From the NCBI GenBank assembly GCA_907165135.1, contig OU015569.1, forward strand, positions 2,728,001 to 2,792,000: a DNA stretch of 64,000 bases, in the 5' to 3' direction. The notes under the pieces are model-generated. The model was not told where the DNA came from and did no database searches. It saw only the letters and a program-made list of their open reading frames with translations. Each line of letters starts with the position of its first letter. Position 1 is the first letter of the stretch. Shown here in pieces: positions 13,284 to 17,284 of this stretch. This DNA is from Oikopleura dioica (Eukaryota; Animalia; Chordata). The position numbers were made by a program, and so were the translations under genes.

Positions 13284-14425
13284 TTAAGAGTCAAAAAGTT
13301 TAGTTATAAATTTTCTGACTTATTTTTTATCAATATACGTAGATTACGTCCTTTACTAAAGGCTTTAGAAAAAGACGCATGAGCCCATTACTTAGGGTGC
13401 CCTGTATAAATGACTGCGATTTTTAGTTCGAAGAATTCATGTTGGATCCTCTTTTGAGAGATTGAATTTTAATCGTTGGGGACGGCCTTAAAATTCGGGA
13501 TTTCCTTACTTCCTTAGTAATTTTACTTGTAGGTTTCCTACTTGATTAATTGTAGAAACCGAAAGAATAATTATCTACACTCCATTACCATTATTCTGGA
13601 TTGTCAATCGATTTGTATCCGAATATTTTATAGAATTCGTTTATTTAATAATTTTCTATATGCTTTACTTTTACAACTATCCGTGATTTCCATGGTGAGA
13701 AAATAAGTTTCATCAAAATTCGACGTTTTTCAATTTTTCTATTTTCTGTTTTCAATTGACGTCAATCTTCTCCCACACACTACGCTATCAAAACGCCAGT
13801 CTCTCTCTTCCTTTCTCTCTTCAGATAGATTAAGAGGGAGAGAGACAACAATAAATATTATGTCTTAATTTCAAGCTATCTTTTTTGCTGCATGTCTGAG
13901 TATTCATAAATGAGAATACGGACATGAATGTCTGAAGACAGCTTTCTGTCTTTATCCGATAGCGTCTATCGTGTTAATCGCCTTTCAGCCTCCACTCCAA
14001 CTACTGAAGCTCTTTTCAGAAGAGCTACAGTCACCGAAACGCTAGAAAGATTTTTGATTATATTTTGCTCAAAATACTTTCTTTGAAATTTCATTCAATT
14101 CAAACGAAGAACTTTTTCTTTTTTACCTTTTCCCGACTTTGCTATTTGCTCGTTCTGTTTTTTTCTGCCTAAACTTATTATTTCATTCAAGAAAACACGC
14201 TTCTGACAAGGTTCTTGTTCAAAATTGAGTAGTTTCGAATTGAAATGGAATTCAAGAAATCTCGTGCTCAAGCGTAGTACTACAACTACAAGGCGTTAAT
14301 TCAGACATATCGTTGACTCTCCCCTTGCGTGGTTGATTTCATTTCGCCAGTGATTTTCCAAAGAGAGAACAAACGAAGAATACAGCTTCGTTTAATTTCA
14401 ATTTTGTTTGAAAGAAGACGCGAAA

Positions 14426-14604
14426 ATTACGTCGACAAAAACCGAATCTGAACTTAGAGTTTTAGGGAAAACTCTCCAGGTGAGTTAAGCTTATATTTCC
14501 CCTTTTCTAGTCCTTTTTAGGGAGTCGTATCAAAATTCGTCGCTGCTGACGGGCTCAACAGAAAGCTCCGATACGGTCTTGCGCCGCCTTGCCGACCGAG
14601 ATAG
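14426..14604 (+). promoter_or_regulatory. AUU-initiated spliced upstream ORF (uCC-like), 45 codons, ending ...GLAPPCRPR*
   Basis: AAA-ATT at 14423-14428; 18 codons to GT donor 14480; AG acceptor 14520; 27 further codons to TAG 14602-14604. No ATG between this stop and the main ATG at 14710. Confidence 0.65.
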
Positions 14605-14709
14605 CACCCTCTAGCTTTCCCACAAAGCCAAAAAATAGAATAGTGTCTTTTCGTCGTTTCGACGTCAATTTCATCCAATCTCCAAATACCAACTTCTCAG
14701 TCCGCAAGA

Positions 14710-17284
14710 ATGAAGATTCCTGACTCGCAAAACTCATTCAACTTACCTCTCAAAACCCACCATTCCTGGGACGATGAACATCTTACCTCTTTCGAGGTTC
14801 AATCCTGCTGCGTGGTGGACTTTCAATCTGTCAAGCAAATGGTAATTGAAGGGAACTCGATCTAGAATTCATGAACTCTTTGAGGTAGCACTTTGGGAAA
14901 CTCACCTGCCCCGGGTGGAAATGTTCCACAAAGTCAAAAGCAACAACAACGTCCGTCTCCTCGCCGATCTTGCCGAACTGGGCCTGCAATTCCAGTTGAC
15001 TTCTAAGAAAGACTTTTCCGCCCTCGAGTCCGCTGGATTGTGCCCTTCCAGCTCCGTCCTCATCAGCCCAGCAAAAATGAACTCGCTGCTCAGAGAAGCA
15101 GAGAAACAATCGGTCCCGCTCTTGTCCTTTGATTGCGAAAACGAACTCGTGAAAATTCGCAAAACTCATCCAGACGCTCAACTTTTGCTTGACGTTTCCT
15201 CTTTTCAATTCCCTCAAGGTATAGCGAAACTCAACTTTTCATTCATCTCTTATTCATGTTCTTTTAGCGATTGATAGCTGCCAATCTCTGCTAGAACGTA
15301 CTGCTTTGTTGGGAATGAAAGTAGCCGGAGTGTGTCTTGACGAAACATCTCTTGGAGATGTAGAACTGCTCAAAGCCGAGCTCTTCAAGTGCGTGAAAGT
15401 CGCGAAAATAGCGAAACTCTTTGGACACGAGCTGAAGATTCTCCATCTTGGAGCAATCATTTACGAAGAACTTCAACTCTTTGAAGCTTTCAGTGCTGAG
15501 CTCTCCACGCTCTTGGACGATCACTTTGCCAACTACAGGTAGATACGTTCGTATTTCTTTTTTTTTAAACGAAGCTAGAATCATGGCGAACACGACGGAG
15601 TTCCACCTTGGCGAGCCTCTCGCCATCTTGACTCCTGTTTTGTCGACGGAAGCAGTGCCCGACCAGGGTGTCCAGGTCCAGCTGAATACCAAGCTCAATT
15701 CCTTCAACGCCGAGCATTTGCCGACCATTGTCACAAGTAAGAGAAACCAGCGATAAGCAAAATTTTACGAAAATTCTCCTAGAAAAGGCGAATCGAAAAG
15801 CAATGCCCGTGTGCTTCCGAGGCGCCGACGATCTGGTCTCTTCTGGGAACTTCCCGGAAGTCTTCACTGGCGACATTCTCCTCTGGAATTTATCAGGTAA
15901 TATCCTAACATAGGTCATCCCCTTGTTACCAGGATAAACGTTGGCGAAAATCTGAATTTAGCAGGATAAACCCCAGGCAAACTTGCCCCCATGTTAGCAG
16001 GATAAACTTTGGCAAAAGGGCTCATTGTTAGCAGGGTAAACTTTGGCACTCAATTAACAGGGTTGCGTGAATCATCAGCGCTCGCCCAGGGCGTGACGTA
16101 ACTGTTAGCCCGAGGAGGACTCAACCTGCTGGAAGAAAATGCGAATGAAGCAAATCTGCTTGAAATACAAGTGAACAATTTTATGTTATTAATTTTAATT
16201 TTAATATATAATTTTTTTAAATTAAAATGGGCCAAAAAATAAAATCCCTGTTCCTGTCTCTGTTCCTGTTTACAGGATTCCGAGGCCATTCATTAGATCA
16301 AGCGACTTCGGTGAAGTATAGCCCATATCATTATAGAATATAGGGACTAATATCTTATATATCTAATATTGGATATAATATCTGCATCATTGCTGACCTG
16401 AGGTCAAGTTGGGGTTACCTGGGATCACTCAGGATCAACTTTGGAGATTTTTCTTCTTGAAAGATGGTTAGAGTCCGAAAAGGGCCAGGTACGAGATCAC
16501 CCCGTTATCAATAGTCAAAATAAAGCTCAGCTTCTGAGCTTTCTAATACAGTATTAGTAATACTGTATAATGTGCCTACCAGAGTTTCAAATTTGCTGAG
16601 TTAAGTGAGCTGAGACTGCTCAGTGATTTTCAAAAGTGAACTGATCTCCTCAGCTCAGACGATAAATTATCGTCGATAATCATTCAGCTCAGCTCAATGA
16701 TTTCAACACAATTTTACTACTAAAATACAGTAAAAAATAGCTCAACTCAGCTCACTCAGCTCAGCGAAAATAAAGCCAAATTTGCAACTCTGGTGCCTAC
16801 CCTCCTAAGCCCTAAAAATAAATAATTTAAAAATATGAATAAATATCAAAATTAAAATTAATAATGATAAAATCGTTAACTTGTATTAAATACTGAATTT
16901 ATAAATATATATTGAAATTTTCAAGCAGATTTTATGAAGATATTTTTCATTGGCATTTTCTTCCAGCAGGTTGAGTCCTCCTCGGGCTAACAGTTACGTC
17001 ACGCCCTGGGCGAGCGCTGATGATTCACGCAACCCTGTTAATTGAGTGCCAAAGTTTACCCTGCTAACAATGAGCCCTTTTGCCAAAGTTTATCCTGCTA
17101 ACATGGGGGCAAGTTTGCCTGGGGTTTATCCTGCTAAATTCAGATTTTCGCCGACGTTTATCCTGGTAACAAGGGGATGACCTATGTTATTTGTATTGTG
17201 AATGAATGCTCAACTGTTTTTTCAGATATGCAATGGTCATCGAAATTCCCCCTTCATTACTTAGATGATAAGCAGATGAACTGA
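14710..17284 (+). CDS. AZIN1: Ornithine decarboxylase homolog lacking catalytic residues (antizyme inhibitor-like)
   Basis: After removing intron 14842-14884, VVDFQSVKQMVALWETHLPRVEMFHKVKSN aligns gap-free with ODC [43 protein letters not shown] is conserved. The last exon (17226-17284) lies beyond an intronic TE. Confidence 0.75.
15908..17187. mobile_element. Long-TIR (foldback-like) non-autonomous element with TA flanks in the last AZIN-like intron
   Basis: 15908-~16170 is a near-perfect inverted copy of ~16915-17187. TA|acataggtcatcc...ggatgacctatgt|TA. Internal sub-repeats caggataaac. Confidence 0.85.
16580..16792. mobile_element. hAT-type MITE with GAGCT/AGCTC repeats, nested in the long-TIR element
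   Basis: Exact 8-bp TSD gtgcctac on both sides; TIR cagagtttcaaattt / aaatttgcaactctg; same family as 41002-42222. Confidence 0.85.

What the first reader, a model, noticed from the sequence alone, without database searches (positions are those of the whole stretch)
14423..14712. AUU-initiated uORF ending PPxxPx-stop upstream of the AZIN-like gene (uCC-like polyamine sensor)
Seen: AAA-ATT start, 45 codons across a 41-nt intron, ending DGLNRKLRYGLAPPCRPR*, then an ATG-free 105 nt to the main start. Known: AZIN1/ODC-homolog mRNAs carry a ~50-codon AUU-initiated uCC ending ...EPPWEPS*, whose PPW motif stalls ribosomes when polyamines inhibit eIF5A function. Inference: the circuit is retained in this fast-evolving genome, with PPW changed to PPC. 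Standard annotation would miss it.
Basis: partly seen in the sequence, partly recalled or inferred. Interest (0 to 1): 0.78.

Follow-up and report, generated by a model that had tools for sequence, protein, structure and literature searches.

The report
Conserved AUU-started uORF before ODC-like gene
The leader of this larvacean (Oikopleura) gene for an inactive ornithine-decarboxylase relative carries a spliced 45-codon reading frame with no AUG. That frame is conserved far better than the main protein and has the layout of the known polyamine-sensing "uCC" of animal ODC/antizyme-inhibitor mRNAs, though with a changed stall motif.

Summary
AAA-ATT lies at 14423-14428. Eighteen codons run to 14479, a 41-nt GT..AG intron spans 14480-14520, and 27 more codons end ...APPCRPR-TAG at 14602-14604. 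A 105-nt ATG-free spacer then reaches the main ATG at 14710.

RNA from other Oikopleura lineages shows the intron spliced out: 41 reads and several transcript contigs. Four contigs carry the spliced leader joined 121 nt upstream of the ATT, so the frame lies inside the mature mRNA.

The frame is 45 codons in every larvacean lineage recovered. It has the same AAA-ATT-ACG start, no ATG anywhere in the leader, and the ending APP-x-[R/K]-P-R-stop. Between the two most distant lineages the peptide is 76% identical and the main protein 39%. Changes are mostly synonymous in this frame only, and the two prolines use three and four different codons.

The main protein is an ODC homologue lacking the catalytic residues, so it is antizyme-inhibitor-like.

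A scallop-type ODC transcript fetched here carries the canonical uCC: AAA-ATT start, 50 codons, ending ...PPWDPS-stop. It shares the P-P-x-x-P-x-stop register. However, the residue after PP varies here (C, L or Y), and the ending is Pro-Arg rather than Pro-Ser.

Verdict: a real, divergent member of a known regulatory class. Polyamine sensing is inferred, not tested.

The parts
14303..14304 (+). AG of the spliced-leader trans-splice acceptor; the mature mRNA starts at 14305
   Evidence: Contigs L003, L007, L011 and L015 begin with the 3' part of the Oikopleura spliced leader joined to the orthologous base. Genomic loci L009, L022 and L006 show ...aattcag| at that point. For the window itself this is inferred from the conserved acceptor.
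14305..14425 (+). 5' part of the leader (121 nt) before the AUU, ATG-free
   Evidence: It is poorly conserved except for its first ~25 nt and last ~15 nt.
14423..14428 (+). AAA-ATT: proposed non-AUG start in the same A-rich context as the main AUG
   Evidence...cAAAATTa is invariant in all larvacean lineages and in scallop-type ODC transcripts (gacAAAATTc). Peptide conservation starts here.
14426..14479 (+). uORF codons 1-18
   Evidence: 93% identical to the Bergen genome.
14480..14520 (+). 41-nt GT..AG intron inside the uORF (phase 0)
   Evidence: 41 spliced RNA reads. An intron at the same codon boundary is present in L009, L022 and L002, but its sequence is only 47% alike.
14521..14601 (+). 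uORF codons 19-45, including the invariant GVVSKFVAADGL and KLRYGLAPP blocks
14581..14601 (+). Terminal A-P-P-C-R-P-R codons: proposed stall and termination module
   Evidence: Pro40 uses 3 codons and Pro41 uses 4 codons across lineages but both are always Pro. Codon 42 is C, L or Y, codon 43 is R or K, and P-R is invariant.
14602..14611 (+). TAG stop plus conserved CACCCTC
   Evidence: 9-10 of 10 bases are identical even in the distant larvacean L004.
14605..14709 (+). 105-nt ATG-free spacer to the main AUG
   Evidence: It is 99 nt in other O. dioica lineages after removal of a second leader intron, and 96 nt in L004.
14654..14672 (+). Invariant spacer motif TCGTTTCGACGTCAATTTC of unknown role
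   Evidence: 95% identical in L004, where the surrounding spacer is 32-47% identical. It is complementary to the AAATT/ACGTCGA start region, but that duplex is not exceptional against shuffles.
14710..14841 (+). Main CDS exon 1 of the ODC homologue
   Evidence: Intron 14842-14884 is confirmed by metatranscriptome contig X1.
14885..15218 (+). CDS exon 2 (Orn_Arg_deC_N; keeps the K69-equivalent lysine)
15268..15538 (+). CDS exon 3
   Evidence: (loose end behind 15218).
15579..15736 (+). CDS exon 4
   Evidence: The end is set by homology to P0003.
15783..15896 (+). CDS exon 5 (missing from the public model P0155)
   Evidence: Homology to P0003, P0151 and P0152.
17226..17284 (+). CDS exon 6 with TGA (missing from the public model)

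Best explanation
This is a translated, cis-acting upstream conserved coding region (uCC) in the spliced-leader-capped mRNA of a catalytically dead ODC homologue, which is probably an antizyme-inhibitor-like protein.

Proposed mechanism, by analogy with AZIN1: most scanning ribosomes pass the weak AUU at 14426 and start at the AUG at 14710. The few that start at AUU translate 45 codons and pause at the invariant A-P-P-x-[R/K]-P-R-stop tail, which sits in a conserved stop context (TAG-CACCC). When polyamines are high and eIF5A is limiting, the pause lengthens and following ribosomes queue back to the AUU. The second proline lies 40 codons, about four ribosome lengths, from the AUU. The queue raises uORF initiation and blocks access to the main AUG. 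Less ODC-like protein then leaves more free antizyme and lowers polyamine levels.

Shown here: position in the mature mRNA, splicing, absence of AUG, fixed length, selection on the peptide, and loss of catalytic residues in the main protein.

Inferred: initiation at AUU, stalling, polyamine and eIF5A dependence, and antizyme binding.
For: - Anatomy confirmed.
- Intron spliced in RNA (L003, L011, L015, L004).
- Spliced leader joined 121 nt upstream of the ATT in four independent contigs.
- 45 codons, AAA-ATT-ACG start and APP-x-[RK]-PR-stop in six O. dioica-type lineages and one distant larvacean.
- L003 versus L004: uORF 76% amino-acid identity against 39% for the main protein (P=7e-7). In the uORF frame dN is 0.20 and dS 0.56; in the other two frames dN/dS exceeds 1.3.
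- About 22 synonymous to 25 non-synonymous events (my hand count from the codon table), against a neutral 27:73 (P=0.003).
- No ATG in any leader (0 observed, 2-3.8 expected).
- The main protein keeps the K69 equivalent but lacks H197, the GGG loop, E274/R277, D332, C360/D361 and Y389.
- The canonical uCC in scallop-type ODC transcripts has the same AAAATT start and the same P-P-x-x-P-x-stop register. Global similarity to the larvacean peptide gives z 3.3-3.7, P 0.003-0.009.
- The AZIN1 mechanism is described in PMC2811004, PMC11058473 and PMC9082881.
- The human uCC peptide ending ...AEPPWEPS is printed in PMC9648851.
Against: - There are no ribosome-profiling, reporter or polyamine data.
- Trp of the PPW stall tripeptide is absent and its position is variable (C, L, Y). 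The ending is Pro-Arg, not Pro-Ser.
- Similarity to the second canonical-type uCC (L020) is nil.
- ACG at codon 2 and non-conserved upstream in-frame near-cognates could also serve as starts.
- Synonymous sites are more conserved than in the main CDS. L003 versus L011 is 135/135 identical although CDS dS is 0.32 (P=1e-5). Some constraint therefore acts on the RNA itself.
- No leader RNA from the window's own lineage was available.
Confidence: 0.72

Rival explanations
1. The block is conserved as an RNA element (structure or protein-binding site) and is not translated. The open frame would be a by-product.
For: Synonymous sites are unusually conserved: L003 versus L011 is 135/135 identical against CDS dS 0.32, and L003 versus L015 has pS 0.16 against 0.41. 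A second invariant motif in the spacer is complementary to the AUU region. The helix appears in the MFE and centroid folds of both L003 and L004.
Against: - Changes that do occur fall mainly on third positions (10, 10 and 19 variable sites by codon position).
- Twelve variable codons are purely synonymous, and Pro codons vary 3-4 ways.
- dN/dS is below 1 only in this frame.
- Length is fixed at 45 codons and the stop is conserved.
- The leaders do not fold better than shuffles (z +1.1 and -0.1).
- The duplex energy is matched by 2-32% of shuffles, and the Bergen-type variant GTCGTC breaks the helix without compensation.
- There is no Rfam match.
Confidence: 0.08
2. It is a translated uORF or micropeptide that represses or acts constitutively, or responds to another signal, and is unrelated to polyamines. 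The likeness to the uCC would be convergent.
For: The W of PPW and the terminal Ser are absent. Sequence similarity to canonical uCCs is weak (P about 0.005 for one, none for another). The review states that uCCs arose independently several times.
Against: It sits on an ODC-homologue mRNA, exactly where uCCs occur. It shares the AAAATT start context, the length class and the P-P-x-x-P-x-stop register with the canonical animal form. Adjacent prolines near the end are the one near-universal uCC feature.
Confidence: 0.17
3. A chance open frame in a leader, given meaning only by allowing a non-AUG start and an intron.
For: A single sequence with a free choice of near-cognate start and splice sites can easily yield such frames.
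Against: The intron is confirmed by RNA. Frame, length and ends are conserved in all lineages, including one whose main protein is only 39% identical.
Confidence: 0.01

Closest known systems
Animal uCC of AZIN1 and invertebrate ODC mRNAs (Ivanov, Loughran & Atkins 2008; Ivanov et al. 2018), seen here in scallop-type ODC transcripts L018/L019
   Same: It lies in the leader of an ODC homologue and has no AUG. AUU sits in an AAA context. The length is about 45-52 codons. Two adjacent prolines are followed by x-x-P-x-stop in the same register. The peptide is conserved most strongly towards the C-terminus.
   Different: PPW is replaced by PP followed by a variable residue (C, L or Y). The ending is Pro-Arg, not Pro-Ser, and F[DN]FNAE before the prolines is replaced by KLRYGLA. 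The frame is five to seven codons shorter and split by an intron. The mRNA is SL-trans-spliced. The host protein is a short (about 356 aa) dead ODC homologue that is not the vertebrate AZIN1 orthologue.
Fungal ODC uCCs (Pezizomycotina, Basidiomycota, Zygomycota)
   Same: Non-AUG conserved coding regions with adjacent prolines near the end, upstream of ODC genes.
   Different: They are said to have arisen independently, are 22-100 codons long, and share no sequence with this one.
AMD1/AdoMetDC uORF (MAGDIS) and the plant AdoMetDC small uORF
   Same: A polyamine-pathway mRNA in which a nascent uORF peptide stalls the ribosome at or near termination in response to polyamines.
   Different: Those are AUG-initiated and much shorter, with different peptides. 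They do not use a queue to activate a weak start.
Antizyme +1 frameshift sensor
   Same: A polyamine sensor acting at a stop codon with a conserved pyrimidine-rich context just 3' of it. It belongs to the same homeostatic circuit.
   Different: It is recoding rather than a uORF.

Membership tests
uCC of ODC-homologue mRNAs (animal type) | Lies in the 5' leader of an mRNA encoding an ODC homologue | tested here: met
   Pfam Orn_Arg_deC_N on exon 2 and on the full proteins. The leader is defined by SL-joined transcripts.
uCC of ODC-homologue mRNAs (animal type) | Conserved coding region without AUG, with a conserved near-cognate (usually AUU) in a strong context | tested here: met
   AAA-ATT-A is invariant and matches the context of the main AUG. 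There is no ATG in any leader. Actual initiation at AUU is not testable here.
uCC of ODC-homologue mRNAs (animal type) | Purifying selection on the encoded peptide | tested here: met
   dN/dS is 0.36 in frame and above 1.3 out of frame. Peptide identity is 76% against 39% for the main protein.
uCC of ODC-homologue mRNAs (animal type) | Two adjacent prolines near the C-terminus | tested here: met
   Codons 40-41 are always Pro, encoded by 3 and 4 different codons.
uCC of ODC-homologue mRNAs (animal type) | Pro-Pro-Trp stall tripeptide | tested here: not met
   The third residue is C (window, Bergen-type), L (L015, L004) or Y (L002).
uCC of ODC-homologue mRNAs (animal type) | Ends with Pro-Ser-stop (animals of six phyla) | tested here: not met
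   It ends Pro-Arg-stop in all lineages. The P-P-x-x-P-x-stop register is kept.
uCC of ODC-homologue mRNAs (animal type) | Recognisable sequence homology to canonical uCC peptides | tested here: inconclusive
   Against the scallop type: z 3.3-3.7, P 0.003-0.009. Against the plankton variant L020: none.
uCC of ODC-homologue mRNAs (animal type) | Polyamine- and eIF5A-dependent repression of the main ORF through stalling and queuing | not testable with these tools
   Needs reporters, toeprints or ribosome profiling.
Antizyme inhibitor (functional class) | ODC homologue that has lost decarboxylase catalytic residues | tested here: met
   Equivalents of H197, the GGG loop, E274/R277, D332, C360/D361 and Y389 are absent. 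K69 is kept.
Antizyme inhibitor (functional class) | Binds antizyme and thereby frees ODC | not testable with these tools
   No binding data. I did not establish whether a catalytic ODC exists in this genome.
Antizyme inhibitor (functional class) | Orthology to vertebrate AZIN1 | not tested
   The review places the origin of AZIN1 in early vertebrates. The nearest non-larvacean relatives found here are invertebrate ODCs at about 40% identity, so an independent origin is likely.

The most novel reading that the evidence does not exclude
The larvacean uCC may be a dual-constraint element. Besides encoding the stall peptide, its RNA would be selected nucleotide by nucleotide, and a conserved 19-nt spacer motif would pair with the AUU start region. 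This helix would loop out the whole uORF, so that start-site choice on this mRNA is set jointly by an RNA helix and by ribosome queuing. The variable residue after Pro-Pro would show that the stall depends on Pro-Pro plus the Pro-Arg-stop context rather than on Trp.
Probability: 0.15. Interest if true: 0.7.

Novelty: new member of a known kind. Interest (0 to 1): 0.5.

Why it matters
The uCC of AZIN1 is the textbook case of ribosome queuing activating a weak start codon. A fast-evolving chordate lineage keeps several features of it: the AUU, a fixed 45-codon length with 40 codons from the AUU to the second proline, Pro-Pro and a proline two codons before the stop. At the same time it freely varies the residue that is Trp elsewhere.

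This gives a natural mutagenesis series showing which features are essential. It also shows that Oikopleura retains translational polyamine control on a dead ODC paralogue, and that public gene models miss both the uORF and the last two coding exons.

Tried and rejected
1. A word search of the protein database with the aligned uORF peptides found nothing. Such non-AUG frames are not called as genes, so this blank says nothing.
2. The 2008 PNAS and 2018 Mol Cell primary papers are not held. I relied on reviews and could not check whether Oikopleura was already in the 2008 supplement. No held paper links Oikopleura, ODC and uORFs.
3. The long-range AUU-spacer helix is predicted in two species, but it is not significant against shuffles and is broken in one lineage. 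I kept it only as a lead.
4. An N-terminal extension from the ACG inside the spacer motif is in frame in O. dioica lineages, but in L004 it is out of frame and closed by a stop (read by eye). Rejected.
5. Read-through fusion of the uORF to the main ORF was considered because the spacers (105, 99 and 96 nt) are all multiples of three. In-frame stops in the spacer exclude it (read by eye).
6. There is no Rfam family in 14200-14800.
7. My first exon-2 end (15228) was 10 nt too long. The true end is 15218. The queries therefore carried three intron-derived residues, which had no effect on the results.
8. An alignment that used L007 on the wrong strand was discarded.
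Full report
**What is in the window.**
AAA-ATT is at 14423-14428. Eighteen codons run to 14479, then a 41-nt GT..AG interval covers 14480-14520. Twenty-seven further codons end ...KLRYGLAPPCRPR, with TAG at 14602-14604. A 105-nt spacer leads to ATG at 14710. Unspliced, the frame would stop two codons into the intron.

The downstream gene is an ODC homologue (Pfam Orn_Arg_deC_N, E 1e-18 on exon 2). Its exons are 14710-14841, 14885-15218, 15268-15538, 15579-15736, 15783-15896 and 17226-17284. The window matches the Okinawa O. dioica assembly, chromosome XSR (L010 is identical over the region compared). 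ZIP and K2P genes flank the locus in that assembly.

**RNA evidence.**
I had one read-laying run. Three oligo-dT RNA-seq runs of the same species label but another lineage gave reads 90-95% alike. They lay only on 14410-14611, and 41 of them skipped exactly 14480-14520. Nothing at 88% likeness or more lay on the flanking leader or on the coding exons.

The uORF is therefore the best-conserved stretch of the locus at nucleotide level. A marine metatranscriptome contig 95-99% alike confirmed the first coding intron, 14842-14884.

**Relatives.**
Exon-wise protein searches and exact look-ups recovered genomic and transcript contigs. A degenerate DNA pattern for the uORF added more. They fall into these groups:
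- Okinawa: the window and L010.
- Bergen reference genome (L009) and a matching metagenome contig (L022).
- Bergen-type transcripts: L008 and L011-L014.
- L003.
- The group L006, L007, L015 and L016.
- A Tara metagenome lineage: L002.
- A distant larvacean transcript, L004, whose main protein is only 39-40% identical.

Every contig that reaches far enough upstream has the frame. It is always 45 codons and always starts AAA-ATT-ACG. It always ends A-P-P-x-[R/K]-P-R-stop, followed by CACCC.

Four contigs (L003, L007, L011, L015) begin with the 3' end of the Oikopleura spliced leader, joined at the base orthologous to window 14305. Genomic loci show ...aattcag| there. For the window's own lineage this rests on the conserved acceptor.

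No leader contains an ATG, where dinucleotide shuffles expect 2.0-3.8. The chance of zero is 0.01-0.09 per lineage.

**Is it coding?**
Twenty-four of the 45 codons plus stop vary among lineages, and 12 of those vary only synonymously. The two prolines use three and four different codons but are always Pro.

For L003 versus L004, dN is 0.20 and dS 0.56 in this frame, while the two other frames give dN/dS above 1.3. All other five frames contain stops.

The peptide is 76% identical between these species and the main protein 39% (binomial P=7e-7). My hand count from the table gives about 22 synonymous and 25 non-synonymous events, against a neutral 27:73 (P=0.003).

Window versus Bergen is 93% and 88% identical in the two uORF exons. 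The same comparison gives 47% in the intron, 58% and 47% in the flanking leader, and 63% in coding exon 1.

**An excess constraint.**
Synonymous sites of the uORF change less than those of the main CDS. L003 and L011 are identical over all 135 nt although their CDS dS is 0.32 (P=1e-5). Something beyond the peptide is conserved, and I cannot say what.

A 19-nt spacer motif at 14654-14672 is 95% conserved even in L004. It is complementary to the AAATT/ACGTCGA start region, and the helix appears in the MFE and centroid folds of both L003 and L004. However, the leaders do not fold better than shuffles. The duplex is matched by 2-32% of shuffled spacers. The Bergen-type variant breaks the helix without compensation. 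I keep it as a lead only. Rfam has nothing here.

**The main protein.**
I aligned it with trypanosome ODC and with scallop, spider and plankton ODCs. All larvacean proteins keep the PLP lysine but lack the equivalents of H197, the GGG loop, E274/R277, D332, C360/D361 and Y389. They are about 100 residues shorter.

This is a pseudoenzyme, so 'AZIN-like' is a fair functional guess. It is probably not the vertebrate AZIN1 orthologue.

**Comparison with the known system.**
Reviews describe the uCC as a non-AUG (mostly AUU, good context) conserved coding region in leaders of ODC homologues. It has two adjacent prolines near the end. In animals of six phyla it ends Pro-Ser.

In AZIN1 a PPW motif stalls ribosomes when polyamines impair eIF5A. 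The resulting queue raises AUU initiation and represses the main ORF. The human peptide printed in PMC9648851 ends ...AEPPWEPS. I compared it by eye only and sent it to no tool.

To have a canonical example in hand, I fetched transcripts of the nearest non-larvacean ODCs.
- Scallop-type contigs L018 and L019 carry gacAAAATTc, 50 codons, ending ...KFNFNAEPPWDPS-stop.
- A plankton ODC (L020, L021) has a variant ending ...AELPWDP that runs on for seven more codons.

The larvacean frame shares with the scallop one the AAAATT start, the length class and the P-P-x-x-P-x-stop register. Global alignment gives z 3.3-3.7 (P 0.003-0.009) against the scallop peptide and nothing against L020.

It therefore meets the broad definition of a uCC. 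It fails two animal-type features, Trp after Pro-Pro and the terminal Ser.

**Mechanism and verdict.**
The best-supported reading is a translated cis-repressor of the AZIN1 type. The stall module would be A-P-P-x-[R/K]-P-R-stop in a conserved stop context. The fixed 40-codon distance from the AUU to the second proline fits about four ribosome lengths.

Position, splicing, coding selection and loss of catalytic residues are shown. Initiation at AUU, stalling and polyamine dependence are inferred.

It is a new, divergent member of a known class. It is useful as a natural variant series and is not a surprise in kind.

**Limits.**
- There is no translation or polyamine data, and no leader RNA from the Okinawa lineage.
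- The species behind L004 is unknown.
- The two primary uCC papers were not available.
- I used exon pieces by reference and natural spliced transcripts instead.
- No contig that I took for human was met.

Noticed in passing
window 15906-17189: A 1,284-nt element with 261-nt terminal inverted repeats (97% complementary) sits in the last intron of the ODC-like gene. The public Okinawa model (P0155, 304 aa) reads into the preceding intron and misses the last two exons, 15783-15896 and 17226-17284.
   Followed up: partly
L009:1012-1054; also L022 and L002: A second 43-nt leader intron begins 10 nt after the uORF stop in the Bergen-type and Tara lineages. It is spliced out in their transcripts. 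The window (Okinawa) has no intron there.
   Followed up: partly
window 14654-14672: A 19-nt spacer motif, TCGTTTCGACGTCAATTTC, is almost invariant across larvaceans. It contains a CRE-like GACGTCA core and is complementary to the AUU start region. Its role is unexplained.
   Followed up: partly
window 14426-14601 and its orthologues: Synonymous sites of the uORF are far more conserved than those of the main CDS. L003 versus L011 shows 0 differences in 135 nt although CDS dS is 0.32. No explanation so far.
   Followed up: partly
L006 (minus strand of the stored locus): A 3.7-kb metatranscriptome contig carries a complete 628-aa ZIP transporter ORF, 1.2 kb of intergenic sequence, the unprocessed trans-splice acceptor, and then the spliced ODC-like leader. 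This suggests co-transcription or read-through from the upstream ZIP gene.
   Followed up: partly
L012:1-122: One Logan transcript joins a different, coding-looking upstream sequence to the same acceptor that elsewhere receives the spliced leader.
   Followed up: no
L009:978-980: The Bergen reference assembly has GAA (Glu) at uORF codon 39. All transcripts of that lineage and metagenome contig L022 have GCA (Ala), so this is an allele or an assembly error.
   Followed up: partly
L020:77-250, L021: A plankton ODC mRNA from a JGI metatranscriptome has a uCC variant with Leu-Pro-Trp instead of Pro-Pro-Trp and no stop after the Pro-x position. It runs on for seven more codons.
   Followed up: no
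window 14605-14611: CACCCTC directly after the uORF stop is conserved in all lineages. Antizyme mRNAs are reported to have a conserved UCCCU just 3' of their sensing stop codon, which may be a parallel.
   Followed up: no
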